A stretch of 64,000 nucleotides of DNA, taken from Macrostomum lignano. Taxonomy: Eukaryota. The translations under genes and the position numbers were made by a program. Below are positions 2,188 through 37,418 of this stretch, piece by piece (within the stretch, counting starts at the first letter, position 1; each line of letters starts with the position of its first letter). The DNA lies in assembly GCA_002269645.1 (NCBI GenBank), contig NIVC01000168.1, forward strand, positions 1-64,000, in the 5' to 3' direction. The notes beneath the pieces are model-generated. The model saw only the letters and a list, made by a program, of their open reading frames with translations. It did no database searches and was not told where the DNA came from.

Positions 2188-2260
2188 TGTGGCCACTGCT
2201 GGCAGAAAAAGAAGTGAAATCAGCATACTTTTATACTCTAAAATAGAAGTTGAGACTGTT

Positions 2261-5800: not shown

Positions 5801-5946
5801 GTCTGCCTACCACACTACCTGTCTTTCTGTCTAATGTCTGTTCCTTCTGTCTGCTTTTACAATTCTTATAGGACGTATCCTCATATCTTAAAAACAGCAG
5901 TCTTATTTATATAAAAATCAATACAGCAAAAAACATAAAAATTCGA

Positions 5947-17491: not shown

Positions 17492-19366
17492 ATAGTTCAA
17501 ATCGGTATAAGACAGCCAATTCATAATTACTTGTATATATTACTAGTAACAGCAAGATAAAAAGAAAAATTACAAGCAGAATTACTTAAGCAAGTTAAAA
17601 TTTGATTGCCAATTAAATTGTAATTGTCACAATTGTAATCTAATTATAATCTGCTTGTTGAGATTGAAATTTAAATATATTTTTTTTATCAAGATTGACA
17701 ATCAATTGCCATTGCCAATTAATTTGCAATAATTTCCCAGTTTAGTTAACTCAATTGTAATTAATGTTCAATTATCACAATTTTAGGCATCTTTAAAATA
17801 AACAGCAAACAATGTATATTTATGATATCTAATATATGTTTACTTGTTTTTTTTTAAATTGCTGTTTAATAATCTGGAAATCCCTTTACCCTGTGCATAG
17901 CTGCTATTTAGTCAATCCGGCAATAGGACAAATCCAGCAACAAACAATCCTTAAAGAATGTTTATATTTTAGGATTGTCGAATTTTAATTTAAGTTTTAA
18001 CAATTTAAGTATTTGTGCAAGTGTCTGTTGATATATATTGGTTCACCTACTATAGCCTATATAAGTGACAAGATGTTGCACAAGAAACTATATATTGTCT
18101 TTATATTTCTTATAAAAATTGCATTTTAGCAAAAATAAGAATTCTGTAGTGCCTAATCAATCATGAATTAAAATAATTCTTAGCAATGAAAACTAATTAA
18201 TAGAACTTTTAGGACCTTTAGCACATTAGGCCTACCAATCAAGTTTTTAGTGAATTGATTTTTGGCAAAAAAAGCATTTGACAAATGGGTATTGGACCAG
18301 ACTAATTGTTTGCCTTTGCTAGCTATCCATCTACAGGCAAAAGAATGGTCCAAATTGAAAAGTTTTAAAATTTTCAAGACATGCTGCACTAATAAGCAAT
18401 AAGATCCTAAAATGTTTTTTAATTATTCACTTATATTCTAGAATTTTTTAAAATAAAGAAAAAGTTGACTTAAAAGTACATACTTTTTCAGAATTTGTTT
18501 GTGAAATGCATATATACATGTACATATGTTATATATTTGTCATATAAATGTAGAATTATAAATATCTCAGAGCAGCAATATAATATAATAAGTTCAAGTT
18601 GAATGTGCCATTATTTTGGGGATAGGCCTATTGTTTGGTAAAATACGATATTTGCTAGTTGCTTATGCGTTATGCCAAACTTAATGAGTGACATAAATGA
18701 CTAAAAAAAAGTTAGGAACTCTACTTACTAGGCCTTTGCTTGCTATAAGTTACTACAATGTCTGTACTCTGTTGCCAATATGACTTATTGCTCAAACAAC
18801 TATTGTCAAAGCATCTTGTCACTATGTCTTGAATAGTAGAAACCTAACCTAAGTTGGTTAAGGCCTACTACATCCACTATTTAGCACTGACAGATGAATA
18901 ATAGTCCACTGGCCAATTGCCTAGGGCAGAGGAATAGTCTAGCAGACATATTGACTTTTGGCAAAAAGGTTTTTGGCAAATTATCTAGCATTTATTTTAT
19001 TTAAAAATCTAGGGGGCCTAATTTAATTAGATTGCGAGGACTTAGCACACAATAAGATGTGCATAGGCCTAGTTAATCGTCTTATTTATCTAATTATGCA
19101 AAAAATTAAAAAAAATCTTTTTCACTTCCAGCACAATTTTTATTACGGATATATGCTACCTTACCCCTGGCCCTACCTACTTGTACGCCATTTTATTTAC
19201 TAGGCTCACAGTTTTTAAGCAAATAAAAAAGAAAAAATTGGCAAGTAGGGATAGCAACGTCCTACTGCTTGTTTTAAAAAGGATTATTATCATTATCTAA
19301 TCTATTGCTTTTATTTAACAAGTAAAAAATCCGAAACAGATATGCTAAATCCAATCACAATACACT

Positions 19367-19636
19367 GAGGCTTTTCATATTACCAATTCCAGAATCAGAA
19401 TCGGTTCGGATCTTCCAAGAAAAACAGCAGTAACTAGGCCTATTTAATTTTGTTGAATGTTTGACTGACTTAACAACCTCACTTAGCAAAATTTTTCACT
19501 TTCTTCTTGGCGATTGTCATTCAATAATAAAAACTTTATAGCACGTATCTCCCTCTAGTTATGGAGACAAAAGTTATACTTCACATCACAAATTGGTTCT
19601 GGTTCTGCAACCAGAACAAGCAATATGAAAAGGCTC
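19367..19636. mobile_element. About 270-bp MITE (PIF/Harbinger-like), copy 1
   Basis: Ends GAGGCTTTTCATATT...AATATGAAAAGGCTC with ACT on both flanks. Near-identical interior to copy 2. Confidence 0.8.
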
Positions 19637-19657
19637 ACTGAGGACGATGACGAAACA

Positions 19658-19925
19658 GGGCCTTTTCATATTACCAATTCCAGAACCAGAATCGGTTCGG
19701 AATTCCAAGAAAAACAGCAGTATAACTATTAAACTCTGTTAATATTTGACTGCCTTAACAACCTAACTTAGCACAATTTTTCACTTTCTTCTTGGTGATT
19801 GTGACATTGTCATTCAATAATAAAAACTTTATAGTACGTATCTCCCTCTAGTTATGGAGACAAAAAGTTATACTTCACAAATTGGTTCTGGTTCTGGAAC
19901 CAGAGCAAGCAATATGAAAAGGCCC
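19658..19925. mobile_element. 268-bp MITE (PIF/Harbinger-like), copy 2
   Basis: Perfect GGGCCTTTTCATATT...AATATGAAAAGGCCC TIR with a 3-bp TSD ACA. Confidence 0.85.
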
Positions 19926-20277
19926 ACAGACAATCGTCATCAGTTAGTAAGCAGCGTCGTCACTTGCAAGCAGGCATACCATGGGATTTAAATCTTAAGA
20001 TGAAATAATATTAACTAAGCAAAAAAATTTAAGGATAAAATAATAATAAGTTAAAGACAAATTTTTTGAAGTAGCTTCAAATTGTTTTTTTTGTATTTAA
20101 ATTAAAAACAAAAAAGCTAATTTTTGCTTACGACTTTAGTTTTCGGTTTGTAGTAGGCAGTTCTTTAAATTTCAATGCCGTGTTAAATAAGACTGCTCGG
20201 CCGTCCGTCTGTCCAGATAAACTTTAGCTGTTGTTAGTGATTTTATCCCGCTAATTTCGTTCATTTGAGTTAAATCA

Positions 20278-23200
20278 ATGGATATCACCGGGTTTTTTGA
20301 CCCCGTCAAGCATGGACTGAAGTCTGACTTCCGACTTACCAAGTTGTCAGATCTAAAAGGATGAGGGTGTAAAGTTCCTCAGGCAGTGTTGCACACACTG
20401 CTAGAGGAACTAAAGAATGAGCCCGTTTCTTCTAATAAAAATGCTGAAGGTACTGTAGATTCAACTAATCATAATGGTTCTTTTAATTCTTCAAATAAAC
20501 CAATAATTGGTAAGCAACTTATGTTATGCCTACATATAAAATTAAACTTAAGAAAATAATTTATTGTTCTTTTGTTCATCATTGTCATTGACCTAAGGTT
20601 CTACATATAGACATCAGACAGGATCCCAATCCCAAAATCTCAGGATCCTGAGGAAAATTGGATTCCCACAGGACTAGGATCCCAACCCTAAAAAACTTAA
20701 GAATTGGGAATAGGTCTTTTATAGTTTTGATTAAAAATTTATAGAATTAGTGATTACTTGAATGTATTTTGTTTTAACTTGCACTCATTACATTATTACT
20801 TTGTTGGTTATAAAACTTTGCATCCATTTTGTTATGTTTTACTTTTTGATTTTGACATTTTTGCTCAATTTTGTTTAATTTTATATGGACCAATAGTCAG
20901 GAAGGTAGCATAGTGTGTGCCAGAATAATTTTTGGGAGAGGGTCTATGCACCTTTTGAATGTGGTTTGTATGCTGTTTATGTGCTCTCTATGCATTGCTT
21001 CTAGTTCTATTCTACATGATAATAAATTATAATTAATGAAAATGTTGATAAATATATTTTTAATAAATTATAATAACTAAAAACATTGCTCTGAAACATT
21101 TAAAAAAGGAATAAAGTGAGCATTTTTTGTTTTAAACTATAACTTAATTCTCTAAAAAGAATTACTTAGAAAAGTTTTTTTATCAAGATGGCCACAGCTT
21201 TTAATGGCTAAATCAATAATAATAAACCTAGGTCTTTATATTTTATTTATTTCTTATTAATAGTAGTTTATGTTAGGTTTAGGTCTTCAAGTCTTAAGGA
21301 GATAGATACTGTAATAGAACTATATTACATAATAATAATTTCTTTTAGCTTCAACTTTTATTGTAACCTGACCTATGGATATTTATCCACTAAATAAAGC
21401 AAGTACATAGCCTAGTACAAAATGAAAACCTTATTGTATGTCTATCTTATTTTTGCATAGCATTACCACTAGCAATGGTATCTTGATAAACTAATAAATG
21501 TAACAATAGAGAATAAATTGGTACAAACATAAAGTTTTTGTATTATAGATAATTAGTTTCAAATCTATTATTGTTCCAGTATTTATGAATATGATTGATT
21601 AAAGATGTATAATAATTAATATAATAATAGCTATTAAGTTTCTAAATTAATGGTAAAGAGTAAGTAGATATAATAGAGATTCAATATTGTGGCTATCTTG
21701 GTCTTACATCTTATGTCCTAGCTATATTATTATTACTATAGTGCATTTGTAGTGCATTACTATAGTGCTCTTACATAGTAGTACAACTATAAATTTGTTT
21801 GAGGGGGTGGATTCTAGAGGGTAAAGAGTTGGGAGAAGGGGATAAAGGAATGGCTTTATTTTTGGTGAAAATTCACTTGAAAATTTACAAATTCACCCTT
21901 TTGATTTTTTAGACATTCATCTAAAGAGTGCAAAAATTGCATAGATAGGAATAGGTCTATATATTTTTCCTATCCCACCATAGGCATCACCAGTGTTATT
22001 TCTATTGCACTATTGGCTCTGCCTCTAATTGAGATAAGATATTTAGAACATTTGGATAATAGTTTTAAATATTTCATTGTGCCAGTGTTTTTAAAATTAT
22101 AGTAACATTCTTTTTCAATAAAATAGCCATTTTGGTAATAACCACTTCGGTAAAAAATCATGACTAATTTGGTAACAGCTGCTTTTGGTAACAAATGCAA
22201 TAAATGAATAATTAGGTTGGACAATATTGAATTTTCAAGATTTTTGAGATTTGATTTTTTCAACTAAACAATATAAGATTTGATCAAGTTTTTAAGATAC
22301 TTAATTCAGATAAAACAAAGCTAAAGACTGAAAAAACTGTTTTATTGGTACAAATTTTATATACTCAAAATAAGTATAAACTTCATGCACTTTTGTTAAA
22401 AATCACAACCTTTAATTTGTAAAAAGCATAGAAATTTTAGGTGCATTATTTTTCCAAACATGGCTAAATCCTAAACGCCTTAATATAGGTAACACTGATG
22501 ACAATGAGTTAATTTTTTGGCAATAATTTGATTCATGTAGAATTTAATGCATTTATATTGATGTCTAGGTAATCTATGCTATCAATTCAAAAGATTAGTA
22601 TTCAACCTTGGGCTCTTTGTTTTCCTTTATAAGAATTCTTTATATATAAATTATTTATTATTTAATCTAAAGTTAGACTCACTACAAAACTTTGTATATA
22701 GAGATTCAGATAAAGGTTAAAGTAGAGTTAAGGCTGAAAGTTATGAGAGATATACAACAAACAAAATGAAATAAATTTGTCTTAAGTAAGATTTTAGGCG
22801 CATGACCAAGACCGCCACATACCAAGACTACCACATACCAAGACCGCCACAGCTCTTACTGACTATTGGAATTGAGGGGAAGTTACCAATCTTCTAGCAT
22901 TGCTATTGGTTATGATGGGTTGTGGAGTTAGATGAGGAGGAAGTGACCCAAGATTGGTCACTAATAAGATGAATAAGTGGCCCAAAATGATTTCAAGTCA
23001 ACCAGGGCAATTTTAACAATTCAAATTAAATGAAAAAAACAAGGAGCCTGGCTCACTCACCTACCTGGCCAGGCTGGCCTGCTCACCAGTTCCTCTCTCG
23101 TGGCTTTGTCTTGCTGGCTCTCCCCATCTCACCCTTCATCAGCACCATCCAATAACATGGCAAGCCAAATTCCTCCCTCCTAGCTCTCCCAAGTGTGGCG

Positions 23201-26200
23201 GTCTTGGTGTGTGGCGGTCTTGGTCCTACACCAGATTTTATGCATTTGAATTTTTCTCTTTTCTCTTTTCTCTTTTTCTCCTTTCTTATCTTATCTTATC
23301 TATCATCTCATCTCTTTCCTTTGTTATCTTTTATCCTTTCTTATATCTTCTTTATCCTCTTTTTTACCCTTTGATTCTTTAGTTGTAGGTGGTTCTAGGC
23401 ATCAAGATGCAATAAGGTATAGCTGTCTATTCTGCTAACCTCTTAAGTCTTCTCTCTATTTTCTATTCTCTTGTTTTTTCTTCTCTAGTCTATCATTTTG
23501 CTTCTCTTCTCTTCTTTTTTTCTAGGCTATCATTTTTTCTTTCCTTTTTTTCCTCTCTTCTCTTTTCTCTTTACTCTCTCATTTCCTCTCTTTAGTCTTA
23601 TCTCTTCTCTTTTTTTAACATAAAGAAATAATTATGTTACTCTTATAAGGTAGTAGCTTTGATCAGATGTTTATCATATACTCATATAAGCTATTAAGGC
23701 TAAGTGCTAACTAATTAATTGTAGTGAGTTATCTATAAGCAAGATTGTAATTATGGCTACCAACCAATAAAGAGAAAAAGAGAGATTAGAGATTTGAGAG
23801 CAAAGATAAAAGAGGAAATAAGTTTTAAAGAATTTGAAGGTCATAGATAAAGGCAAAGGCCAGAGTTTGCCAATGTATGTTTTAGACAAAATTTGCAAAT
23901 TCTGATTAGTACCCCAGCCTATGTTATCATTTGTCTCAATATTATTTTAGCACAAATTTGCTCCATTTCTTACTCAATTTTTGTTTAGTATGACCATGAA
24001 TGTGCAAAAATAGTTCTAGAGTTTTTTTTCAGCAGATCCTATGCCTGGCTACATGTATGTAAATAAACTTGATACATATCTGAACTTGTAATGCATTTTC
24101 CTGCTTGTGACAGTGTCCTTTTAAGTAAATTGAGTGTATTAAATTTAATTAGACTTTGAATGTAAATGCTAGTATATCATAGCTTGGCTGGACACTGACA
24201 GGTAACTGTTACTTTTCAATTATATCATGTTAATTAATTAATTAATTTTTAGGAATTGGCTTGGACTCGTGTGTTATACCTCTTCGACATGGCGGACTGC
24301 ATCTGATTCAAACTACGGACTTTTTCTATCCTCTAATTGATGATCCATACACTATGGTAAATGCTTAGCTTATCTCTTACTTGTTTTAAGTCTGTGTGTG
24401 CATTTGTTTGAAGATTCATTTTTTCTGTCAAATACTAAAATATAAAACCAGAATGCTAGCTAGTCAAAAATTTACTCTGACCAGGGCTGGGCGAGTATTG
24501 GTTCTGTGACTGGCCGAGTACTTTGTGTGTGGCTTCTTTTTGAAAGTTGATTAGCTGCCTTTTCTGGGAAAGAAAATCGTTAATATTCCAATCTGGGGGA
24601 TGCTTGTGTGCTAGGCCTCTTGGCTCTGTCTTATAAAGTCCTAATTCTGAGCCTCTGCCTAGTCCTTATGCTGCCACCAAAGTTGTCAAAGGGCTAAACT
24701 CCTGCTTTATAAATGTTGGTAGCTGCCACCAGGATTATCCTATTAATAAATTATGAGTTTATCAATCTTAGAATAATCCGAGAAACGTTTCTTAGAATTG
24801 ATCTGAGTATATATCTTAGTATTTAGTCTGAGTATTTAGTCTGAGTATTATTCTTGGAAACTATTAGCCCTTAAAGATTTTATTCCTCTGTTATTCTGGT
24901 AGCGTTTATTCGGATTCCGGTAGCGTTTGCTGTACTTTTGGCCTGAGTGGTCTATTGGCTATACTGGTATATGTATTCCATGTACTTTGCAAGTCCTTGG
25001 GCGTTACCGAGATCAGAGGGTCACAGCCTCCGGTTATTCTTACACGTATCACTTCAGATCTACTTCGTATTCTCTTACTACTCAATACTGCTGCTTCTCA
25101 ATAGTATGTACTGTATACGCTTCAGTCTATTTCACTCTTACTTCTTAAAAGGAATTAACACAGAAAACACTTCTTCAAATTCTTATTTTCTCGGAACTCT
25201 TACTATTCGCTATCAATCACTTATTGCGGAACCGCGATGCGCAAGGTAGAAGGTTAGTTCCTCTTTCGCCGGAATCGCTTTTATTTATACTAAAATTTCC
25301 TATAGTTTTAAACAAAAATTCGTTAGCGCAAAATATTATAGAAAATAAGAGTATTAAAACAAAATATCTTTCTTAGTTTTGGCGTGAATTCAAATAGACT
25401 AAACGGTGACTATTTTATAAAGAAATCGGGAGGGGCCTGCACACTTGCTATCTGCGGGATGCTTGCTGTCTTGGGGATATGTTTTCTATTTAGGTAGAGT
25501 GTCTGTTATCTTTGTGAAGGCTTTATTTTGTTGTCTTTTTGTTACTTTTAGAAAACAGACATTCATAGCAAACAATTTTACCATGATAATTTTACTCGAA
25601 TAAAGTGATTTATAAAACTGAAGAAGGAATTGGTTCTTAAGAAAATGTGCTTCCTAATGGATTTGCATAAATAATTTTTGCTCCTTTCTTATTGGTCGCC
25701 TCGAAGAGGGGCACTAAATTGCTAGTTACTTTTCTAATAATCATCAAAACTTGATTTTAAACGAGTACTGAGTGCCAAATACCCAATACCGAGTACAATA
25801 CCTAGGGCCGTTTCTGACTCTGAGAAGTTGCAGAAGTCTTCTCCAGACTCTATGTTTTTAGGCATTGACAGAGAGAAAATTGATAAAAGCCTTTAAATCT
25901 TAAGAATCACAATAAAATGAAATATAAATTAATAATAATATCAAACGAATCGAATGGTATCCAAATTTAAAAACTTACACTAGTGCCGAAGTTGATGTGT
26001 CATGACATACGCTGTTCCACAACAAAACCTATCATCAGAGAACAATTTTAATAACAAACTCTAAAATAAAACAAAACAACATGTACAGGGTCGCATCACC
26101 TGTGCCAACGTTCTAAGCGACCTATACGCTATGGGAGTGACCGAATGCGACAACATGCTAATGCTGCTTGGCGTTAGCAACAAACTGTCTACGGACGAGA

Positions 26201-28420
26201 AGGAGATTGTTGTTAAATTAATTATGCAAGGATTTCGCGACTGCGCACTGGAAGCTGGTACATCGATTCAAGGCGGTCAGACTGTTGTGAATCCTTGGAT
26301 GGTGATTGGCGGTGTGGCTACGTCTGTTTGTCTGCCTAGCGAGTACTGCCAGCCTGATGGCGCCGTGCCTGGCGATGTGTTGGTCCTTACTAAAGCTCTG
26401 GGGACGCAGGTATGTGAATAATTTGCATTGTATTAATTGTACATGTAGTTTGCTAGCTTCTGCCGCTGAATGTCTTTTGAAGTTGCTTTAATCTTAATTC
26501 TTAACGTTCCCTCATTTCTGTGACCCTGTTTTACTCCCTCTCAGGTGTACTGTCACTTTCTTCCTTAGTCTCTTCAGGTGTACTGTCACTTTCTTCCTTA
26601 GTCTCTTCAGGTGTACTGTCACTCTTCCTTAGTCTCTTCAGGTGTACTGTCACTCTTCCTTTGTCTCTTCAGGTGTACTGTCACTCTCTTCCTTAGTCTC
26701 TTCAGGTGTACTGTCACTCTCTTCCTTAGTCTCTTCAGGTGTACTGTCACTTTCTTCCTTAGTCTCTTCAGGTGTACTGTCACTCTTCCTTTGTCTCTTC
26801 AGGTGTACTGTCACTCTTCCTTAGTCTCTTCAGGTGTACTGTCACTCTCTTCCTTAGTCTCTTCAGGTGTACTGCCACTCTCTTCCTTAGTCTCTTTAGG
26901 TGTACTGTCACTCGTCTTCCTTAGTCCCCAAAGGTGTACTGTCACTCGTCTTCCTTAGTCCCCAAATGTGTACTGTCACTCTTCCTTAGTCTATACAGGT
27001 GTACTGTCACTCTCTCCTTGGTCTCTTCAGACAGATGTGTGTACTGTCACCCCCTTAATCTCTTCAGTTTTAGTCACTTCTTTTCCTTAAAGTCTTGGAA
27101 TGTAGTGTCACTCCTCTAGACACTAGATGAACTATCAGTCTTCTAGCTATTCTCTTCAGGTAAGCTACCTGTCTACATTCCTAAGTACCTTAATATCGGT
27201 TGTTTTCACTTCCTCTTTAGTCTTCTCATGTTGAATCTGCTATTTTATAAATCAAATTGTTTTATAAAATTTCCACAATACAGGTAGCAGTGAATGTACA
27301 CCAGTGGCTAATTGAACAGTCGGATCGTTGGCGTCAGGTATCAACGGTGCTCACTGAGCAGCAAGCACGTCAGGCTTATCAGTCAGCAACCAGACAGATG
27401 GCTCGCCTTAATCGCACGGCGGCCCGTCTGATGCGGCAGTACAATGCGCACGCGTGCACCGACGTGACCGGCTTCGGACTGTTAGGGCACGCCAACAATT
27501 TGGCAGCTTGCCAGAAAGCCGACGTGTCTATGGTGGTGCACAATCTGCCAATCATTGCCGGTATGGCGGCTGCTAGCGCTCATCTGGGCGGTGCTTTCGG
27601 TTTGTTGCGAGGCACTTCGGCTGAGACTTCCGGCGGATTGTTAGTTGCTATGTCTAGAACTGATGCGGCAGAGTATTGCAAGGTGAGGATCATTTCTTTA
27701 TGTATTGTATTTATTTAGCATTTTAATAGTAAATTGATTACACCTGCCCCAATCGCAGCTATTGCGCAGCGCATCTGAAAGCTGCGTGCGGCTGTTCAGT
27801 CCACGGACTGGGGGTCGGCACACACCCTCAGTTACCCCAGCTAAATGCTGGCACCCATTTTACAGCTGGATGAACTGAAGCAATACAGAGTTGAGTGTCT
27901 TGCTTAAGGGCACAAATTGTTCCGATTGTGGGATCGAGAATTGAACCCTCGACCTTCAAGTTGCGAGTCAAATCAAATCAAATCAAAATTAGTATATCGA
28001 TAGCTTTTGCACTGTTTGTCTGTCTGTGTAATTCATTTTTTCAAGAACCATCTGGCGAAGAAATAATAGCCGATATGTATCGTTTGTCGATCTGCTCGGA
28101 ACAATTTGCGTCCTTGAGCAAGACACTTAACTCTGCATTGCTTCAATTCACCCAGCTGTAAAATGGGTGCCAGCCATTTAGGTGTCTATGGCGACCCCTC
28201 CAGTCGTTGGACTGAACAGTTACTATGTTCTATCCTATTAATAAAATCTAAAAGATAATCATTTCCAAATTCTATTTCAAAGGCTCTCGAAGCCACGTCA
28301 AGCTCTGACGGCGGCGGTGCAGCATGGATTGTTGGTGTTGTTGAAGCTGGCAGTCGGTCAGCTGTCATTGCTGACAAGCCGCGTATTATTGAAGTCAATG
28401 CCGCTGGTAATACCGAGTAA
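20278..28420 (+). CDS. SEPHS2: Selenophosphate synthetase with in-frame UGA (selenocysteine) at codon 29, SPS2-type selenoprotein, 5 exons, 397 aa
   Basis: Exons 20278-20509, 24253-24356, 26089-26409, 27284-27682, 28283-28420 (1194 nt, GT-AG, in phase). [14 protein letters not shown](20362-64)-[82 protein letters not shown]. Confidence 0.95.
20373..20411 (+). promoter_or_regulatory. Stem-loop 8 nt downstream of the UGA (Sec redefinition element, SRE-like)
   Basis: AGTTCCTC (20373-80) pairs with GAGGAACT (20404-11). GCAGTG (20383-88) pairs with CACTGC (20396-401). Confidence 0.75.
22797..23232. mobile_element. 436-bp MITE with GG...CC ends, subterminal repeats and 8-bp TSD (Merlin-like) in SPS intron 1
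   Basis: AGATTTTA at 22789-96 and 23233-40. ACCAAGACCGCCAC-type motif three times at the left end, and its reverse complement twice at the right end. Confidence 0.85.
26542..27050. repeat. 31-33-bp minisatellite (CAGGTGTACTGTCACTCTTCCTTAGTCTCTT) in SPS intron 3
   Basis: About 15 copies of ggtgtactgtcact inside intron 26410-27283. Confidence 0.95.
27742..27975 (-). mobile_element. tRNA-derived CORE-like SINE, 5'-truncated
   Basis: The reverse complement shows a B-box GGTTCAATTC, then CTTAAGCAAGACACTCAAC...CAGCTGTAAAATGGGTGCCAGC and the same 3' tail as the copy at 32661. Confidence 0.8.
28080..28222 (+). mobile_element. CORE-like SINE fragment, inverted relative to the 27742 copy
   Basis: ggaacaatttgcgtccttgagcaagacacttaactctgcattgcttcaattcacccagctgtaaaatgggtgccagc...ggactgaacag. 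Confidence 0.8.
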
Positions 28421-29335
28421 AATTTATTTTCAATAGTTGAGGCAGTAGAATCAGTCCGTTGTTTTTGTGTGCAGTCCTCAAAGTTGACTATCTGTGCTGA
28501 ATTTTAACAAAAGCCTTTGCATCCTTGAATTGCTTTATGGCAATCGGTTCTTAAGAGCAGACTATTGAATTTTTTCTTAGAAAGAGGAGTCCAAGCCTAT
28601 TCCAAGTTGTTTTTGCCAATTTTACCCGACTTATTCATTGCTGTCATGTTTTGATTATCAATCCATTTGTCTGATGATTTTTTCTGGTACTCTTTCAGAT
28701 CGATAAACACAGGAACGTTTTTTCATTAGAAATTCAAATATAGAAAATTACGCAAATAAATCAGTGGTTTAAATCTGACACTTAATAAGCGTACTTTAAG
28801 ATTTCGAAGCTCGAAAGTTTACTAGCTCGAAACTTCATTAAGCTCAATTTTTGACAATTTCAACGACAAACCTGATTGCATACCATTTCAACCTACTATT
28901 TTTATATTAGCACAATTGATTTAGCTTCGCGGCCTTCAAATTATGCTGTAAGTCCGGTGAATGGTGCTTAAGGTGATCAATGTTTTTGGGCTGAAAGCTT
29001 ACGAACAGGTTGAAATGATATGCAATTAGCTTTGTGTGAGGCAGATTTCTCGTCGATAGTTTTCAACAATACAGCTAGATGACTTTCAAGATGTGACTGC
29101 AAAATCGTAAAATCAAAGTTTGCCCTTGTGAAAACGTTTCTGTGTTTGTTTAAGAAGGCTACTAGTTTTGTCCTAATTGTTAATGTCATTTATGATTTCC
29201 TGTAGCTAACAACACACGATATTAATTCAAGTCAGTAAAATTGTTGTTTCATTTCAAGAATTCGGAGATTCAATCGTAGCAAAATGGTACGCTCTTTTTA
29301 TAGGTCTATGCATTGCGATTCGGACAGCAATAAAC

Positions 29336-29391
29336 ATGACGATACAGTTTGAAAATCAGTTCGTTGTTAAAACTGACCGACTGTGTCCGAA
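29336..29391 (+). promoter_or_regulatory. SECIS element (form II) in the SPS 3' UTR
   Basis: ATGAC (29336-40); helix II GATACAGTTTG / CCGACTGTGTC (8 contiguous pairs including one GU); AAA at 29352-54; apical mini-stem TCAGT/ACTGA; CGAA (29388-91) closes the GA quartet. Confidence 0.85.
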
Positions 29392-29624
29392 TAGAAGATG
29401 GAGGAATGCCTCCCTTATCCGATCGCATTGCTTTGACTGGGGCTGTGTGATTTTAAAAACAAGTTGCTGTGGTTCTTTGTTTTTTTTTCAAATCTAGCTT
29501 GTAGAAGTTGTAAAGCTTTTTCTTGAAGTTAAGTTCAATTTATATTTATTTAGCCAACAGCTATGAAGTTTTAAAGAAATACTGGAAAATATTGTTTAGT
29601 GACTAATTACTAAATGAGAATCAG

Positions 29625-29895
29625 AAGTGACTGTATGATGAGGATTAGAAGTTTCTCTATGATGAGGATCATAAGCGACTCTTTAGTGAGGATCAAGAGT
29701 GACTTTAGGGAGGAATAATATTGACTTTTTAGTGAGGATCAAAAGTGACTCTTTAGTGAGGATCAGGATTGACTCTATGGTGAGGATGAGGAGTGACTCT
29801 GGTGAGGATCAGGAGTGACTCTACGGTGGGGATCAGGAGGGACTCTAATGAGGAATAGGTTAACTCTTATGAGGATCAGGAGTGACTCTCCAATA
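29625..29895. repeat. Degenerate ~24-bp tandem repeat (GTGACTCT..GTGAGGATCAGGA)
   Basis: About 11 imperfect copies of gaggatca/gtgactct. Confidence 0.8.
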
Positions 29896-30178
29896 AGGAT
29901 TATGAGTAAATACTTAAGTTAAAATTTCAAATGTGCTCTTTTAGGTGAAAAATTATTAATCAATAAAGCATTTGTTTACGTGCATTGCTTCTACTTAGCT
30001 AGGCATATATACAAGCTAATTAAAACCTCACGTATTGAATCTGCTAGTAAACTGAGCTAACTAGCACAGTAGCGAAGATTTGCTTGATATCTTTGTATTT
30101 TCGTTCCAGAGCTCATAAGTCAATCGATATTCTGTCAATCTTTGAATAAAACGTCAAGTAAGATAAAAAAACGTAAAA

Positions 30179-32182
30179 ATGTCGAATACTGAACAAGAAG
30201 CAGCCAAATGCATCTCGCGGTTTTGCGAACGGACAGCTGATGGCGAAAGTCCCTTCTCTGTTTTTCCTTTGTGCCAAGAACATCTTGACGAAGATTTGCA
30301 AAGATGTGAAAATCGAAAGGCTGATATTCTTGAAAAGGTCGATAAGCTCTCTTGCAAGTTGGGGAGACAGTCGCTTCAGTTAGAGAAGCAGGCTTTGGCT
30401 ATAGAAATCCAGGAGATTGCCGATATGTTCGATTCCATTCAAGAAAATCTACAGCAGTGGAAAGAAAAACTTATTTCGAGTGTGCAGAACGTGCACGATG
30501 GTGTGTCTGACAGGCTTGAAATTGCATCTGAATCAGACGTATGCGCCAAAGACATAGCTACAGTGTCTAACTCTGGGAATATGCGCGACCTGATACAGCT
30601 TACAGTGTCCATGGAATCCTGGCTAGATGCTGCCACTAGAAGAACTGCTGAATTTGATCAAAAAAGAGCTCAGTTGCGACAGCGACAGAACAATAACTTT
30701 GGTATTCGTTCTGTCGGAGATGTCGCTGCTGGTGTCCAGCACTTGCAAAATTTGTTTGACAGGCATCTGAACGACGTGATGAAGACTTGCTGGCTTGATG
30801 ATGGGGAAACTAAACCAACAGGAATGTTAGAGCATGATTCTGAAATAGGCGATTTAACGAGCAAACCAACACATGTTGCAGCGTGCACTAACACTGCTGG
30901 ATTTTTCGGCGATGCCTCAGGTCGGGTAGTTCGAGCTGACTCAGTTGGGCATGAAATCTCCCAAACGTTGCCACAGCCTTGTATTTTTGTGGCCTTTGAA
31001 AATCAGAGCGCCGACCATCTATTGGTACTGTCACTTGATGGTTCGGTGAGACTTAAATGTCAAGGTGAGTCAGTCAGCGGTCAAACCGCTATCAAAGGAT
31101 TCGAGTGCGACAGTAGACGCCAGCTGTTGTATGTTGGCCGTGCAAATCTTGTTTCTGTCGCTGACTTAAGTGGCACTCTGCTTCATACTATAGACGGTGA
31201 ACGTATCAAGCGTCCTTTTGGTACCGTTCACGGCATGACAGCCAACTCTGATAAGTTGTTTATGCTTTGTTCGACAGACAACGTATTACTGTGGACAGAC
31301 AACGTATTACTGTGTATTAATAAAGATTCACTTCTAGTCGACTCAGAAATCAGATCTAGAGTATTTAACTGTTTAACATCTGCCTCTGTTGGAGTCGGAC
31401 TACATGGCGGTAAAATTATACTATCGGATGCAAAATTGGTGACTCAAGGAAAAACTAGGAAGTACAAAACTTCGGTCTACAAGATTTGCAGTGTCAGTGG
31501 CGAACTAATTCGTTGCGTTAATTTTGTGAGTTCTTTGCCTGATGAAAATAGACACATGTGCCAAGTTTCGGTCTCTAACACTGGCTTCTTATTCTTGTGC
31601 AACTTGGCAACATTAAGAGTTTTATCTGGTTACAATTTTGAGAGTTTAGCTTCTACTTCTCACTCGGAAGCACCAAGCGATCTGGCTCTGCTGCAGTCGC
31701 AGATTATTGTGACAAGTATCGTTACAAATTTATTCTCGAGTCGGTCAAAATTGCACTGTTATAAGTTTCATGGTGAGTTGAAAATTATGCATGTATGTAA
31801 AATCCTCCACGCTGAAAATTTCAAGAACAGAAACCAGAAATTTAGCTGTTATTCATGGCTTTATTAGCTTAATTAGCTCGTAGCACGCTGTGTTTTAATA
31901 ATTAGCGTTTTTACACTTCTGATAAGAAATTTGATAAGAAATTCTTATCAGAAATCTGATAAGAAATTCTTATCAGAAATCTGATAAGAAATTCTTATCA
32001 GAAATCTGATAAGAATGTAACACACGCTTATGCAATTAAAGTAGTCTGTTCATCAAGTCAAGAGCTTCTGTTAACATTTGATTTAATGGAACATTGAATG
32101 ATTTCGAATCTTTGTCTATAAAGTTTCGAAGTTGTAAAGATGGGGATATTGTTGTTTTTATTTATTTCTAATTACAGTTTGA
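30179..32182 (+). CDS. Array gene 1: Zn-finger (B-box-like)/coiled-coil/beta-propeller protein (TRIM-NHL-like, no RING), about 532 aa spliced
   Basis: ORF 30179-31867 with C-x4-C-x15-C-x2-H, a heptad helical region and a propeller-like C-half. Donor GTGAGT at 31773 and acceptor ctaattacag at 32177 give ...CYKFHV*, matching the paralogue ends. The unspliced alternative is 562 aa. Confidence 0.8.
31917..32015. repeat. Tandem array of a 25-bp palindromic unit (TCTGATAAGAA-A-TTCTTATCAGA-AA)
   Basis: tctgat at 31955, 31980 and 32005. The arms are exact reverse complements. Confidence 0.9.
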
Positions 32183-32315
32183 TTCTTTTTTCTTTTTAAG
32201 TGATTCAATTGAGTTATACGAGCCGTATTTATGCTAGCCGTAGCCCGCTATTGTAAATTATACGTTTAAGTGCCCAGGAATAGAAAAAAGTTAGTCGCTG
32301 ATGTGTAGCTGTCTA

Positions 32316-32603
32316 TACTCAGCAACATTGGAAAATTGCCATCAGAAGATTCGGTCTGTGGACCTGTGGTCGCCACTTTTCAAAGTGTAGGTAAAGTCTC
32401 TCAACCTTGCGAGTGACGCAACCTACATGTAGCTACGCCACGCGACAACATTTAGGTCGAGGAATGAAGTGGGGGAATCTCGGTGTGCGAGGATTAGACG
32501 GATTAAAGCTACCCCTCAGTTTTCTCGTATCATTTATTTCAGAATTGTCAAAGATAAATGCTCACTGGCGCATATAGTGACGAGTTTTCAATGTTGCTGA
32601 GTA
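32316..32603. mobile_element. About 290-bp MITE with TACTCAGCAACATTG TIR and TA TSD (Tc1/mariner-like)
   Basis: CTATACTCAGCAACATTG (32313-30) and CAATGTTGCTGAGTATAG (32589-606). A diverged interior homologue lies at about 12440-12590. Confidence 0.75.
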
Positions 32604-32660
32604 TAGCTACTTAATAGTTATTTATTATTCTATACTGGGGTGGGCTATTGGGATATTACA

Positions 32661-32950
32661 GGTTGTAGCTTAGTGGTTAGAGCGTCGGACTTACGACTTG
32701 AAGTCGGGGGGGGGGTTCGATTGTCGACCCACTCAGAACAATTTGTGTCGTTGAGCAAGACGCTTAACTTTGCATTGCTTCATTAACTAATAGCTGTAAA
32801 ATGGATGCCAGCATTAGCTAGGGCAGTTGAAAGTGTGTGTCACCCCCAGTCCTTGGACTGAACAGCCATACGCAGCCTTCAGATGCGCTGCGCAAAAGCT
32901 GTGGCTGAGCTGTCGGTTGCGCATGTGACCCAATTAGGGCAGGTAAAATC
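32661..32950 (+). mobile_element. Full-length tRNA-derived CORE-like SINE
   Basis: A-box TAGCTTAGTGG (32666-76), B-box GGTTCGATT (32714-22), CORE-like GAGCAAGAC...GCTGTAAAATGG, and a 3' region shared with the 27742 copy. Confidence 0.85.
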
Positions 32951-34635
32951 AATTATTAGGGGTATAGGGGTGAAGTTATGCGTGATTATACGAGAGTTGA
33001 CAAAAAAACAAATATACAACTTTAAGCGAGAGGGGCAGAGAGCGCAATCTGTGTCATACTGCCATAAAAGTCAGAAAAAATAATAATTCTAATAATAATA
33101 ATAAATAACAATTATTTTCATCTGGTATATTGTTTATTATCACAGCTATATCAACATCCATCCTCCATTACACAGCCGAGTGTTTTTCGTTTCAAGCCGT
33201 AGCCAGCGGATGAGTTTCACTCTCATGGACAGACGCGGAACAAGCATATTTGAGCACTTACTCGTATTCACGTGTAAGCTAAATACGAGTAACATTTTTA
33301 TTGACTCGGTTGAATTTTTTATCGAAGTGTATACAAACTATACTAATGACCCGTGTCCTTAATGAAGTTTTCGTCTTAATAGTCTTAATTTAAGCTTTGT
33401 GTCCTCTGTTGCCTCCTTATCTTCATTTGTAAAGAATATTAGAATATCCAATTAAGTGAGCCTGTTCAAGTATTTTACTCTTAGCACTGAACTGATCAAA
33501 TAAAAAATAAGCTCAGATATGCAAGCAGATAGCTTAGTAAGTTACTCGTTGCTAGTTAATAAGAAGGTAACGTTCGTTACTTCGTTACCGCTTATCAAAA
33601 AATTACCGATATATTGAAATTATATTAGTTAAAATGATCATAAAGTTTTTTTGGTAGCAGAAAAAGAAACAAAGCTTATTTTCAATTTCAAGTCAACTAA
33701 GGTATCCTATTTTATTTACTGCTCTACAGATTCGATTAAACGTACAGAAAGAAGCTTGTTTTGCCTACTGAAAGCAGCTAGTAGACTTGTTAGCATCGTG
33801 TTTTAATCGATCTCAATCAAACGGAAAAGTAACTCTAAAGTAACAAGTACTTATCGCTACTTAGTTTCTGGCACCGATAATAGAATGACTAAGGTATGCC
33901 ACTCAAAAAATGCGCTCATTTACTCTCTAAGTATAGCGACAATAGTTTTTGCACTTAAACTTGTAAAACTAATAAATTTTACAAGACTTCTGACTTTCTG
34001 TAAGCAGAGTCTCACCAAACCCATTAATTGTCCTAGATTCTAAGTGATTTTTTATGAAATCCTAAAGGTCTTAAAGACTGAAGATAGCGCTCTTGATACC
34101 AGCAAGGCTGATGAAATTGTTACCTTATTTTCCTACTATTGTTTTTGTTGACGTTTATTTTCCTAAGAATTTATGTCATAAAATGTTGCTACTTCGTCCA
34201 TCTCTGATACATGTATACGCGATTGCGATTTTTATGTATCCATTGATATGTTATACTATATGTTATATGTTATATCAACTCAACAGTGACATGAAAAGTT
34301 TTTAGTTCAGACTATTCTGAACATTTTTCTTTAAATTTTATTAGTAAGCATTAGTAGCGGAAAGTTAAGTTGATACTATGCTTAGTTTTGTGTTTATGAT
34401 TTTATTTTATGTCGTAGCTTAACCTTTTCATGTAACGTTTTTTGCGTCTTGCATGCAGCCTTCTACATCTCTGTCAGATTCTTACAATAAATATGCCGCG
34501 CACAGCTGAATGAGTATCTACTAAATTCAATAGAAAAATTAATTGGTTCATTTTTGATGTCATTTTTTTTCATATAAAACTAGTATAATACTCGTAATAA
34601 TAAAAAACTGATTTACCTGACCAACTGCCCGGAAA

Positions 34636-34990
34636 GTGCCCGTCAACATAAGCTCATAAAGTTCATAAGCTCATGAGCCCGAGTAGCCTATGCACAAAAA
34701 TGACACGTCATTCTGCTCACAGTAATACCGGGAAGCTGGGTTTGGCAATAAGAGGGACACAAATTGGACTTAAGAGAACGAGCAAGGGGATGGTTAGGGA
34801 TTATTATGTCAACCTAAGCTCATAAAGTAGAGTCCCTAATTATCCCATTGCTTGTTTTTTCCTATCCCAAGTCGAATTTGCATCGCTCTTTTTGCCAAAC
34901 CTAGCTTCCTAGTGTCATTGTCAGTAGAATATTATTTGTGTACATAACTTACTCGGGCTCCACTTTATGATCCTAAGTTAACAGCCCATT
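34636..34990. mobile_element. Foldback/MITE with about 130-bp imperfect inverted arms
   Basis: gagcccgagta...ggaagctgggtttggcaa (from 34675) mirrors ttgccaaacctagcttcc...tactcgggctc (to 34960). Confidence 0.7.
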
Positions 34991-35428
34991 TAAAGTGCCA
35001 AATGGAAAGATGTGTAAATTTTTATGCAGCGTTCTAGCCTACTTTTCAAGCTTTGAAGTACGTATAATAGGTTTTAGTTCAGCCAATTTGCCAAGAAAAT
35101 GAGCCCACGAGCGTATATTTTGTCCTTATTAGGTATACAATGTATACGCAGTTTGCTAGGGACGATTTAAAGCCGTTCTTTCTACGTTGTTGATATACGA
35201 GCTATTACAACTGCTGTGTAAAGTAATTTCGATGGCATATGATATAGAAAATTCATAAAGCTGCTGAAGCTTCTTAAATCCAAGTAGTGATGTTTCTTTT
35301 GATAGTTATTTTCTCTTTAATATTTGGTAGGATTTGTTTATAGATTTCTCTAGCAACTATTGAACACATATGGGTATTAATTTCAATAAATTGAAGGCTA
35401 ACCGGTTGCTTTAAATTGTTTTCTTTGC

Positions 35429-37027
35429 ATGCCGAAAATGTCAAGTGAACAGCAAATCTGCATTGCTAGATCCTGCGATCGTCCGGCTGAAGACACGAGT
35501 CCATACTCTGGTTTTGCTTTCTGTCGGCAGCATCTTGCCACTGAGATTCAGCGTCTAGAGAAACGACAACAAGAACTGCTAGATAAGCTTGACAAACTTA
35601 GCAACTGTTCAGAAAGACAGGCAATGCGTCTTGGTCAACAAGTTTTGATTGTTGAGATGCAGGAGATTACAGACATGTTTGAAGCTGTTCATAATAGACT
35701 GCACCAGTGGAAGGATCGGTTGGTGTCGCATGTGCAAAAGATCCATGACAATATTGCTACCACGCTTAAGGATGTAGACGAGGCCGATGCTTGTAAGCAG
35801 GAACTAATGCAGGCTCGGGATTCGGGACAGCTGCGCAAAGTGATGGAGCTTGTTGTTTCCATGGAATCATTCGCTGATGACGCTATGGACCGATTGCCAG
35901 AGCATGAAGAACTTCGAGCCGAATTGAAGCAAGATGCTCCCAATCGAATCATTGGCGATGTGTCAGTTGGAGTACAGCAGCTTCAGTTCAAGATCGATCG
36001 ACATTTCACAGATTTGACACAGCACTGTAAGCTTAAAGACATGCCTTCTGATGACTCACCGCAGTGCAATGTGTGCAAGTTCGATAGCACTGTCTCCGAG
36101 CTTCCAAGTGGACCTCGGTACATAACTTTGTGTCAAAACACGAAAAATTATGCTGCCAACCATACAGGAGTGATTATTCCTGCTAAACAAGCTGATAAGA
36201 GAAGTTTAGAACTGCCAGAACAGTGCTTATTTATAGCATTTGATAGGAACAAGGCGGATTATTTGTTGGTGATATCACTAAACAGACGTGATTCTATCGA
36301 TGAGCTAAAGTATCGCTGCGAACAGTTTAACTGGAGCAAGGACATATATGGCATTCATTGCGACAGCAATCGGCAGCAGCTGTTTATAGCTCAGGATCAC
36401 GCTGTGACAGTGACAGACCTGTGTGGCCGAATTGTTAGAGTGGTGACTTCTGATCTGTTCGGTTGGCCTGTTGGAAAGATTTCTGGAATCTCTTGCAACG
36501 GAGACAAAGTTTTTGTGCTAGTGTTGGGCAGCCGCAACCAGAAGGTGCATTCATTTAGCAAGAACTCCGGAAATTTGGAGTCCAGCCTTGATTTAAAAGG
36601 CCATTTTGATGGCGACTTGCGCAAAATCTGCCTGCAAGAGAGCAAGATTTGGCTAGCTGATTGGAAATACCCGAAAGTTTACAAAGTTTGCGGCATTTCT
36701 GGGAAGTTAATTGAAACCATTGATTGCATTGAATCATGTGTTGGTGATATTAAGAAAACGAAATTTTCGCCAATACACATTTGCACTGATGACAGAGGCC
36801 TTTTGTTTGCTAGCCTGATGTCGGCAAATAGCGTAGAAATTTTTGTTGGAGATTCCGTTATTATTAAGTTTCTGGTAGATTTCAACATCGAAGGCGAAGA
36901 AAACGACGACTGCTTTGATCGCCCGGCAGACATGATCATTTTTAACGACGAGACAAAGAACTGCAAGAAGTTAATAGTTTGCGATTATGCTAACGAGAGG
37001 CTCTGTATTTTCTTGCTTTCCACTTAA
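35429..37027 (+). CDS. Array gene 2: B-box-like/coiled-coil/beta-propeller protein, 532 aa, intronless
   Basis: CIARSC...FCRQH, coiled coil, propeller-type blades (IHCDSNRQQLFIA, IWLADW, RPADMII, IVCDYANERLCIF). Confidence 0.88.
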   Translation: MPKMSSEQQICIARSCDRPAEDTSPYSGFAFCRQHLATEIQRLEKRQQELLDKLDKLSNCSERQAMRLGQQVLIVEMQEITDMFEAVHNRLHQWKDRLVSHVQKIHDNIATTLKDVDEADACKQELMQARDSGQLRKVMELVVSMESFADDAMDRLPEHEELRAELKQDAPNRIIGDVSVGVQQLQFKIDRHFTDLTQHCKLKDMPSDDSPQCNVCKFDSTVSELPSGPRYITLCQNTKNYAANHTGVIIPAKQADKRSLELPEQCLFIAFDRNKADYLLVISLNRRDSIDELKYRCEQFNWSKDIYGIHCDSNRQQLFIAQDHAVTVTDLCGRIVRVVTSDLFGWPVGKISGISCNGDKVFVLVLGSRNQKVHSFSKNSGNLESSLDLKGHFDGDLRKICLQESKIWLADWKYPKVYKVCGISGKLIETIDCIESCVGDIKKTKFSPIHICTDDRGLLFASLMSANSVEIFVGDSVIIKFLVDFNIEGEENDDCFDRPADMIIFNDETKNCKKLIVCDYANERLCIFLLST

Positions 37028-37418
37028 ACCGATGGATCAAGCTTAGCTCAAGTAAAGCGGTTATTGACCGAAGAATGTGAATATCGTAACTCGTCGTTTG
37101 TAACAGTTTTCTCAAAACACATTCTTTTACTTGAAGATATATGTATACCTAATATTTCATTTATAAATTTTATAAATATTTATATTAATCTTAATTTTGG
37201 TGCTTGCTTATCTTAAATCTTTTTAATTGCAAGCAGAATGTTCAATCGCCATAGCGTACAGAATTTTTCACGTTTTTTGCTACGCTGCATTTTTACATAT
37301 CTATTGTACTTTCAGTACCGCATGGCAAGTGTTTGTCGTATTTAACAGTTAAAATTTATTTCTTTATTTATTAGTAATCGTTACACATTGTTTTTTGGTT
37401 CCAAGTAGCTCGTACTTA

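What the first reader, a model, noticed from the sequence alone, without database searches (positions are those of the whole stretch)
20278..29431. Complete selenoprotein SPS gene hidden from the ORF track: in-frame UGA, downstream hairpin and SECIS
Seen: exon 1 reads [20 protein letters not shown], with the TGA at codon 29. The five exons splice to 397 aa, and a form-II SECIS sits about 915 nt after the stop. Established: this is the Sec/Cys catalytic site of SelD/SPS2, so the enzyme that makes the selenium donor itself needs Sec. Inference: automatic annotation would truncate this gene or start it at exon 3. The organism should encode tRNA-Sec, eEFSec and SBP2.
Basis: partly seen in the sequence, partly recalled or inferred. 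Interest (0 to 1): 0.85.

Follow-up and report, generated by a model that had tools for sequence, protein, structure and literature searches.

The report
Flatworm selenophosphate synthetase selenoprotein gene
This is an ordinary, correctly read gene for selenophosphate synthetase 2 of the flatworm Macrostomum lignano, which uses a UGA codon for selenocysteine; its only news is that the public annotation cuts off the first 111 residues.

Summary
Five GT-AG exons (20278-20509, 24253-24356, 26089-26409, 27284-27682, 28283-28420) splice to 397 codons. TGA at 20362-20364 is codon 29, inside [18 protein letters not shown].

The product is a SelD/SPS protein: TIGR00476 E 1.2e-75, and human SEPHS1 structures at E 1.5e-145 over residues 6-391. 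The TGA sits on the Sec/Cys (Thr in SPS1) catalytic position.

A 16-bp hairpin lies 8 nt after the TGA (20373-20411). It is in the same register in six other UGA-containing SPS mRNAs, with compensatory changes, so it is the known Sec redefinition element.

A form-II SECIS (AUGA 29336, AAAA 29352, GA 29389) lies 915 nt after the stop. It is one of only two sites this good in 128 kb of both strands.

The window is the start of Macrostomum lignano contig NIVC01000168.1. A second genomic copy keeps the TGA and differs by 7 substitutions, all synonymous.

SPS2-Sec with SRE and SECIS is textbook and already reported as the single SPS of flatworms. This is a new, mis-annotated member of a known kind, and interest is low.

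The parts
20278..20509 (+). Exon 1 (start codon to GT donor). It encodes residues 1-77 plus the first base of codon 78, and includes the N-terminal glycine-rich catalytic loop and the variable linker.
   Evidence: An in-frame stop lies 4 codons upstream. The alignment to human SEPHS1 starts at residue 6 of both proteins. This exon is identical in the second genome copy, L001.
20362..20364 (+). In-frame TGA, codon 29: the selenocysteine codon at the SelD/SPS catalytic Sec/Cys position (KG-U-GCKVPQ).
   Evidence: The same LKG*GCKVP context is found in transcripts L004-L010. The TGA is also present in the second copy, L001.
20373..20411 (+). Sec redefinition element (SRE): a 16-bp interrupted hairpin inside the coding sequence, starting 8 nt after the TGA.
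   Evidence: The 85-nt stretch around it folds at -30.9 kcal/mol, z -4.5. Pair list. It is in the same register in 6 other SPS2-UGA mRNAs. 85.7% of cells are paired against 31-53% for slid partners, and 4 pairs show changes on both sides.
24253..24356 (+). Exon 2 ([14 protein letters not shown]...DDPYTM). Its last codon, ATG 24354-24356, is the false start of the public 286-aa annotation.
26089..26409 (+). Exon 3 (AIRS N-terminal domain).
   Evidence: It has 4 differences from the second copy, all synonymous.
27284..27682 (+). Exon 4 (AIRS_C domain). This is the only part visible as a long ORF in a bacterial-style ORF list.
   Evidence: It has 3 differences from the second copy, all synonymous.
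28283..28420 (+). Coding part of exon 5, including the TAA stop at 28418-28420.
28421..29309 (+). 3' UTR between the stop codon and the SECIS. This is inferred; no transcript data are available.
   Evidence: It is contiguous in both genome copies, with 9 mismatches in 1680 nt plus indels. AATAAA hexamers lie at 28755 and 29329.
29310..29431 (+). Form-II SECIS element. Its parts are: helix I (29310-29324 with 29418-29431); 5' internal loop (29325-29335); core AUGA 29336-29339 opposite GA 29389-29390; helix II (29341-29351 with 29377-29387); unpaired AAAA 29352-29355; mini-stem (29356-29361 with 29371-29376); and an extra 5-bp hairpin (29400-29413) in the 3' internal loop.
   Evidence: Its single difference from the second copy, at 29328, falls in a loop.

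Best explanation
Window 20278-29431 (+) holds the complete selenophosphate synthetase 2 (SPS2/SEPHS2-type, SelD family) gene of Macrostomum lignano.

Shown here:
- Five exons give a 397-residue AIRS/PurM-fold kinase. Codon 29 is UGA, at the catalytic Sec/Cys position of the N-terminal loop.
- A conserved stem-loop (SRE) begins 8 nt after the UGA.
- A form-II SECIS lies 915 nt into the 3' UTR.

Inferred from established knowledge of eukaryotic Sec decoding:
- SBP2 bound to the SECIS recruits eEFSec and Sec-tRNA(Sec) to the ribosome at UGA-29.
- The SRE slows or disfavours termination there.
- The full-length enzyme then makes selenophosphate from selenide and ATP. Selenophosphate is the selenium donor for Sec-tRNA synthesis, so the pathway's first enzyme depends on its own product.

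The public 286-aa gene models are truncations. They arise because the UGA is read as a stop.
For: Gene model: GT-AG at all four introns and 397 codons.

Homology: TIGR00476 selD, 254.6 bits against a cutoff of 125. Pfam AIRS and AIRS_C. Human SEPHS1 structures 3fd5/9hjt match at E 1.5e-145, collinear across every exon junction. U29 lies opposite Thr29 of SPS1, and the [23 protein letters not shown] and TD-TGFG motifs are kept.

Same UGA context in other organisms: six independent transcripts or contigs.

SRE: z -4.5. Conserved in register with covariation. Score 0.289 against 0.185 for shuffles (0 of 500 reach it) and at most 0.116 for slid controls.

SECIS: satisfies AUGA / 12 nt / AAAA / mini-stem / GA. 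The local fold has z -3.9. It has the same geometry as the SECIS found in the 3' UTRs of SPS2 transcripts L008, L009 and L010, including an unpaired nucleotide next to the quartet. Only 2 of 502 ATGA sites in the window score this well.

Purifying selection: the second genomic copy (L001/L003) keeps the TGA, and 7 of 7 CDS differences are synonymous.

Literature: flatworms carry a single SPS2-Sec, and all UGA-containing SPS genes have an SRE (PMC4561486). Flatworm TGR and TR are selenoproteins with a SECIS (PMC2873472).
Against: - No transcript or protein data were available, so the splice junctions, the 3' end and the inclusion of the SECIS in the mRNA are inferred.
- Rfam's SECIS_1 model gave no hit. 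It also missed the SECIS of the control SPS2 transcripts, so this negative carries little weight.
- The SECIS has two unusual features: a C-C mismatch next to the quartet, and a long 27-nt 3' internal loop that holds an extra hairpin.
- An alternative in-phase donor at 20449|20450 could shorten the linker by 20 aa.
- Exons 1 and 2 are identical between the two copies, so the selection test says nothing about them.
- No Sec machinery could be looked for, and no tRNA lies in the window.
Confidence: 0.9

Rival explanations
1. SPS1-UGA-type gene. The UGA is read through with a standard amino acid, helped by the stem-loop as in Hymenoptera, and the protein has the non-selenophosphate 'SPS1' function. 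The 3' element is not a working SECIS. A milder form of this reading: both Sec and non-Sec isoforms are made from the one gene.
For: A strong hairpin lies next to the UGA. Mariotti et al. propose that metazoan single-copy SPS2-Sec genes, flatworms named among them, have dual function, and that SRE/HRE promote Sec-independent readthrough (PMC4561486). AATAAA hexamers at 28755 and 29329 could in principle give SECIS-less transcripts.
Against: A well-formed SECIS is present and nearly unchanged in both copies. The hairpin is the simple SRE form, not the three-stem HRE with the UGA in an apex. Flatworms use selenoproteins and therefore need a working SPS2 (PMC2873472). AATAAA is expected by chance about 1.6 times in 1.8 kb at this base composition.
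Confidence: 0.06
2. Pseudogene or nonsense allele. The TGA is a disabling mutation, and exons 1-2 are relics.
For: None beyond the stop codon itself. The public annotation ignores exons 1-2.
Against: The TGA sits exactly on the Sec position shared by other SPS2 mRNAs. It is present in both genome copies. All 7 CDS differences between the copies are synonymous. The SRE and the SECIS are intact. There are no frameshifts or other stops in 397 codons.
Confidence: 0.02
3. The annotated 286-aa protein (M112-E397) is the real product, translated from a transcript that starts in intron 1 or exon 2.
For: This is the deposited model.
Against: It would lack the catalytic N-terminal loop and the first conserved aspartates (GIGLDSC, TTDFF), which align perfectly with human SPS1. 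Exons 1-2 are conserved, in frame and flanked by canonical splice sites. Truncation at the first Met after a Sec-UGA is the known annotation artefact for selenoproteins (PMC13134290 abstract).
Confidence: 0.02

Closest known systems
Metazoan SPS2 / SEPHS2 (selenophosphate synthetase 2, Sec-containing; e.g. human SEPHS2, Drosophila SPS2)
   Same: The same SelD fold and motifs. UGA at the same catalytic position (KG-U-GCKVPQ). An SRE stem-loop just after the UGA. A SECIS in the 3' UTR. The same tendency to be truncated by automatic annotation.
   Different: Short N-terminus: Sec is at residue 29, as in insects, not about 60 as in the mammalian protein (residue numbers for those species are from my own knowledge). 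A lineage-specific Asn/Ser-rich linker, residues 47-77. It is presumably the only SPS gene of the organism, as reported for flatworms (PMC4561486), rather than one of an SPS1/SPS2 pair.
Human SEPHS1 (SPS1; PDB 3fd5, 3fd6, 9hjt, 9hju)
   Same: The best solved-structure match: E 1.5e-145, collinear over residues 6-391.
   Different: SPS1 has Thr at the position that is UGA here, has no SECIS, and does not make selenophosphate.
Hymenopteran SPS1-UGA with HRE (PMC4561486)
   Same: An in-frame UGA at the same codon, with an RNA structure next to it.
   Different: Those genes lack a SECIS. [quoted passage not shown] Here a SECIS is present and the hairpin is the simple downstream SRE.
Bacterial SelD-Sec with bSECIS
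   Same: The same enzyme family (TIGR00476), with UGA at the same site and a hairpin right after it.
   Different: Bacterial decoding uses only the adjacent hairpin (with SelB). Here there is a kink-turn-type SECIS 915 nt into the 3' UTR, and the gene has spliceosomal introns.

Membership tests
SelD / selenophosphate synthetase (TIGR00476; Pfam AIRS + AIRS_C) | Whole-protein score above the curated cutoff of the equivalog model | tested here: met
   TIGR00476: 254.6 bits against a cutoff of 125, E 1.2e-75. PF00586 and PF02769 are both above their gathering scores.
SelD / selenophosphate synthetase (TIGR00476; Pfam AIRS + AIRS_C) | N-terminal glycine-rich loop with Sec/Cys followed by G-C-K, plus the conserved aspartate motifs | tested here: met
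   [30 protein letters not shown] and CTDVTGFG all align column for column with human SEPHS1.
Eukaryotic SPS2-Sec selenoprotein gene | In-frame UGA at the catalytic position in an otherwise open, conserved reading frame | tested here: met
   TGA at 20362-20364 is codon 29. There is no other stop in 397 codons. The same position is UGA in L004-L010. It is kept in the second copy, and 7 of 7 differences between copies are synonymous.
Eukaryotic SPS2-Sec selenoprotein gene | SECIS element in the 3' UTR | tested here: met
   Consensus and fold scan and native fold. The Rfam covariance model was negative for this element and for the controls alike, so that test was inconclusive. SECISearch3 was not available.
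Eukaryotic SPS2-Sec selenoprotein gene | SRE stem-loop downstream of the UGA | tested here: met
Eukaryotic SPS2-Sec selenoprotein gene | Sec actually inserted at the UGA; Sec machinery (tRNA-Sec, SBP2, eEFSec, PSTK, SEPSECS) encoded in the genome | not testable with these tools
The literature reports selenoproteins and tRNA-Sec in other flatworms (PMC2873472, PMC5330540).
Eukaryotic SECIS, form II | AUGA on the 5' strand and GA on the 3' strand, forming the non-Watson-Crick quartet | tested here: met
   AUGA 29336-29339 and GA 29389-29390, with G-A/A-G apposed. The adjacent C29340-C29388 is unpaired, as in control L008.
Eukaryotic SECIS, form II | Helix II of about 9-12 bp, with unpaired AA 10-13 nt after the core, followed by an additional mini-stem | tested here: met
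   9 bp plus 1 bp. AAAA begins 12 nt after AUGA. The mini-stem is 6 bp with a 9-nt apical loop.
Eukaryotic SECIS, form II | Helix I closing a short internal loop below the core | tested here: inconclusive
   A 13-bp helix exists (29310-29324 with 29418-29431). The loops it closes are long: 11 nt on the 5' side and 27 nt on the 3' side, the latter with an extra 5-bp hairpin. That is atypical.
Hymenopteran-type SPS1-UGA / HRE | No SECIS, and a three-stem structure with the UGA in an apical loop | tested here: not met
   A SECIS is present. The UGA lies 8 nt upstream of a single hairpin.

The most novel reading that the evidence does not exclude
Macrostomum lignano has only this one SPS gene, and it serves both the SPS2 function (Sec isoform, SECIS-dependent) and the SPS1-like function (non-Sec readthrough isoform helped by the SRE). 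Poly(A) signals upstream of or touching the SECIS (AATAAA at 28755 and 29329) might regulate which isoform is made. That would make this transgenesis-ready flatworm a direct test bed for the 'ancestral dual-function SPS' hypothesis of Mariotti et al. 2015. The atypical SECIS, with its long outer helix and extra 3' hairpin, could be part of such regulation.
Probability: 0.1. Interest if true: 0.55.

Novelty: new member of a known kind. Interest (0 to 1): 0.2.

Why it matters
The practical value is a corrected gene model. The M. lignano proteins found here in NCBI and UniProt (245-294 aa, one fragment of 140 aa) all lack the catalytic N-terminus, including Sec-29, so any analysis based on them is wrong. 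Full-text searches turned up no description of M. lignano SPS2 or its selenoproteome.

The locus also marks M. lignano as a selenium-using species and gives a species-specific SRE and SECIS for finding its other selenoproteins.

Conceptually it adds nothing new. SPS2 being itself a selenoprotein, its SRE, its SECIS and its mis-annotation are all well described, for flatworms included (PMC4561486).

Tried and rejected
- Rfam scans for SECIS over 19000-31000 and over 29280-29460 found no SECIS family. The same scan also missed the SECIS of control SPS2 transcripts, so I rejected it as evidence against.
- My first gap-free SECIS scan found the site but missed the controls. I replaced it with a constrained-fold scan.
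- The only better-scoring SECIS-pattern site in the window (55759-55841) does not adopt that fold natively (z -0.98), so it is a chance match.
- Transcripts L005-L007 gave no SECIS with my scanner. Either the element is non-canonical or it lies outside the contig. I left this unresolved.
- An exact look-up of UniProt model P0001 found no contig. P0121 did, and it gave the three genomic loci.
- No M. lignano transcript carrying the gene surfaced in the protein search, so the splice junctions could not be checked against RNA.
- ARAGORN found no tRNA in the window, and so no tRNA-Sec.
- The alternative donor at 20449|20450 was considered and ranked lower. The 20509 donor preserves the conserved P-x-[ILV]-G-I-G motif (KPII-GIG here, against PRL-GIG, PVV-GIG, PKI-GIG and PRI-GIG in homologues).
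- The weak mir-26-like hit at 19605-19689 (-), E 0.58, 20.9 bits against a gathering score of 57, was dismissed as chance.
Full report
**1. The observation**

Reading 20100-30600 and splicing the candidate exons confirms the finding. ATG 20278 is preceded by an in-frame stop four codons upstream. Exon 1 runs to 20509 and reads [37 protein letters not shown], with TGA at 20362-20364 as codon 29.

Exons 24253-24356, 26089-26409, 27284-27682 and 28283-28420 follow. Every intron is GT...AG. The CDS is 1194 nt, giving 397 residues and TAA at 28418-28420. In a prokaryote-style ORF list only exon 4 shows up (27257-27718), so the gene is indeed hidden from an ORF track.

**2. What the protein is**

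- Pfam finds AIRS and AIRS_C.
- NCBIfam TIGR00476 (selD, equivalog) scores 254.6 bits against a cutoff of 125.
- The best solved structures are human selenide, water dikinase 1 (3fd5, 9hjt), at E 1.5e-145. They align collinearly from residue 6 to 391 and run smoothly across all four exon junctions.
- In that alignment the UGA codon sits opposite Thr29 of SPS1, inside the LKG-x-GCKVPQ loop. This is the position that is Sec or Cys in catalytically active SelD/SPS2 (established knowledge, and PMC4561486).
- The metal and ATP-binding motifs are all kept: [20 protein letters not shown] and TDVTGFG.

**3. The organism and the public annotation**

The nearest database protein is a 289-aa 'Selenide, water dikinase' of Macrostomum lignano, at 98% identity but only 71% coverage. 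Its cluster holds six M. lignano models of 140-294 aa.

Fetching the contigs that encode the 286-aa NCBI model (PAA46211/PAA54132/PAA88987) gave three loci of assembly GCA_002269645.1. One of them, NIVC01000168.1 positions 14354-38420, is 100% identical to window 14354-38420. The window is therefore the first 64 kb of that contig.

The 286-aa model equals residues 112-397 of my model exactly. It starts at the ATG that is the last codon of exon 2.

**4. A second copy as a test of selection**

Loci L001 and L003 (NIVC01002962.1 and NIVC01004991.1) carry a diverged copy. It could be a haplotype or a homeologue; M. lignano is known to be partly polyploid (my own knowledge).

- Exon 1, including the TGA and the hairpin, is identical in L001. 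L003 begins downstream of exon 1.
- The CDS differs at seven positions, all synonymous.
- Splice sites are kept.
- The 141-nt SECIS region differs at one base (29328), which lies in an internal loop.

This argues against a pseudogene. The test says nothing about exons 1-2, because those exons carry no differences.

**5. The hairpin after the UGA**

Bases 20373-20411 form an 8+8 bp stem with a 5-nt loop. The 85-nt stretch around it folds at -30.9 kcal/mol with z = -4.5, and none of 200 shuffles folds as well.

To see whether this is more than a local accident, I pulled six other SPS transcripts or contigs whose called proteins begin just after the Sec position. All have LKG-UGA-GCKVP. All fold into a hairpin in the same register, starting 8-9 nt after the UGA.

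On a 7-sequence alignment (A1) the structure is paired in 85.7% of cells, against 31-53% when the partners are slid by 1-3 columns. Four of the 16 pairs change on both sides, for example column pair 21-53 (CG/GC/UA) and column pair 29-45 (AU/CG). The covariation score of 0.289 exceeds all 500 shuffles.

This is the Sec redefinition element (SRE) already reported for all UGA-containing SPS genes (PMC4561486).

**6. The SECIS**

The native fold of 29300-29440 (-43.4 kcal/mol, z -3.9; pair list) gives the following layout:

| Element | Coordinates |
|---|---|
| Helix I (13 bp) | 29310-29324 with 29418-29431 |
| 5' internal loop (11 nt) | 29325-29335 |
| Core AUGA | 29336-29339 |
| Helix II (9 bp + 1 bp) | 29341-29351 with 29377-29387 |
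| Unpaired AAAA | 29352-29355 |
| Mini-stem (6 bp), 9-nt apical loop | 29356-29361 with 29371-29376 |
| Core GA | 29389-29390 |

This is the form-II consensus, and AUGA begins 915 nt after the stop.

Rfam reported no SECIS family. It also reported none in the control SPS2 transcripts, so that negative is uninformative.

I therefore wrote a constrained-fold scanner: ATGA, a closed single stem-loop, unpaired AA 9-14 nt from the core, then GA.

- In the controls it finds one SECIS each in the short 3' UTRs of L008, L009 and L010. These have the same geometry as here: AUGA + 11-13 nt + AAA(A) + mini-stem. L008 even has the same unpaired C...C next to the quartet.
- In the M. lignano 3' region it finds 29336 at -14.0 kcal/mol, plus a weak GTGA site inside a tandem repeat.
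- Over all 502 ATGA sites on both strands of the window, five pass at <= -9 and two at <= -14. The other strong one (55759) does not fold that way natively (z -0.98).

The chance expectation for a 1.7-kb 3' region is thus about 0.03-0.07.

Two features are atypical: the C-C mismatch next to the core, and a 27-nt 3' internal loop that holds an extra 5-bp hairpin (29400-29413).

**7. Mechanism**

Shown: a UGA at the catalytic codon, an SRE, a SECIS and a conserved SelD body.

Inferred from the established eukaryotic pathway: SBP2 binds the SECIS kink-turn and brings eEFSec with Sec-tRNA(Sec) to the ribosome at UGA-29. The SRE disfavours termination. The resulting enzyme phosphorylates selenide with ATP to make selenophosphate, which SEPSECS uses to make Sec-tRNA. 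The enzyme is thus a product of the pathway it feeds.

**8. Rivals**

- Non-Sec readthrough, as in hymenopteran SPS1-UGA. This is disfavoured by the SECIS and by the simple form of the hairpin. A minor readthrough isoform, the dual-function idea of PMC4561486, cannot be excluded.
- Pseudogene. Disfavoured by sections 4-6.
- The 286-aa model being real. Disfavoured because it lacks the catalytic loop.
- Alternative donor. A second in-phase donor at 20449|20450 would remove 20 linker residues. The 20509 donor keeps the conserved P-x-[ILV]-GIG motif of homologues, so the 397-aa model is preferred but unproven.

**9. Comparison with what is known, and novelty**

SPS2 as a selenoprotein, its SRE, its SECIS, its presence as the single SPS gene of flatworms, and the routine mis-annotation of selenoproteins are all published (PMC4561486, PMC2873472, PMC13134290 abstract).

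A full-text search for Macrostomum plus selenoprotein found nothing specific, and none of the database models found is full length. This is therefore a new, correctly resolved member of a known kind. It is not a new phenomenon.

**10. Verdict**

Confidence in the SPS2-Sec reading is 0.9. Interest is low (0.2), because a specialist would expect exactly this.

Noticed in passing
window 1-64000 (= NIVC01000168.1 1-64000); window 1-11000: The window is the first 64 kb of a Macrostomum lignano contig (GCA_002269645.1). Its first ~11 kb is mostly satellite arrays with periods of 66, 32, 57, 33, 28, 31 and 30 nt and strong strand skews.
   Followed up: partly
window 20449-20509: A second GT donor (GAAG|GTACTG at 20449|20450) is in the same phase as the 20509 donor. 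It would give a 377-aa isoform lacking 20 residues of the Asn/Ser-rich linker. Homology favours the distal donor, but only RNA data can decide.
   Followed up: partly
window 26541-27030 (intron 3): A 33-nt unit is repeated about 15 times (92% matches). The array length differs between the window and the second genome copy (L001/L003).
   Followed up: partly
window 27847-27925 / 28096-28174 (intron 4) and 22797-22851 / 23194-23232 (intron 1): MITE-like inverted repeats. In intron 4 the arms are 79 nt, 91% complementary and 170 nt apart. Intron 1 has 31-39-nt arms built from a 16-nt unit.
   Followed up: no
window 29615-29889: A 24-nt tandem array (about 12 copies, TGAGGATCAGGAGTGACTCTAG-like) lies between the SECIS and the next gene. 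Its copy number differs in the second genome copy.
   Followed up: no
window 28755, 29329, 29962, 30145: AATAAA hexamers. One lies upstream of the SECIS, and one ends one base before the SECIS AUGA. If used as poly(A) signals they would give SECIS-less transcripts. Their number is not clearly above chance at this AT content.
   Followed up: no
window 30179-48861 (+): Six tandem, apparently intronless paralogues lie directly downstream of SPS2: 30179-31867, 35429-37027, 39463-41142, 42032-43642, 44979-46559 and 47260-48861. They are 526-562 aa long and 31-64% identical to one another. Each has a Cys/His-rich N-terminus and a coiled-coil-like stretch, and some have weak NHL-repeat hits.
   Followed up: partly
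window 60653-62962 (-): A 769-aa ORF with no Pfam match.
   Followed up: no
window 55759-55841 (+): The only other strong hit of the SECIS-pattern scan. It does not adopt that fold on its own (z -0.98), so it is taken as chance.
   Followed up: yes
L005, L006, L007 (SPS2-UGA transcripts from Logan and marine metatranscriptomes): These UGA-containing SPS2 transcripts have 1.0-1.2 kb of 3' UTR, yet my scanner found no canonical SECIS in them. Either the element is non-canonical or it lies beyond the contig end.
   Followed up: no
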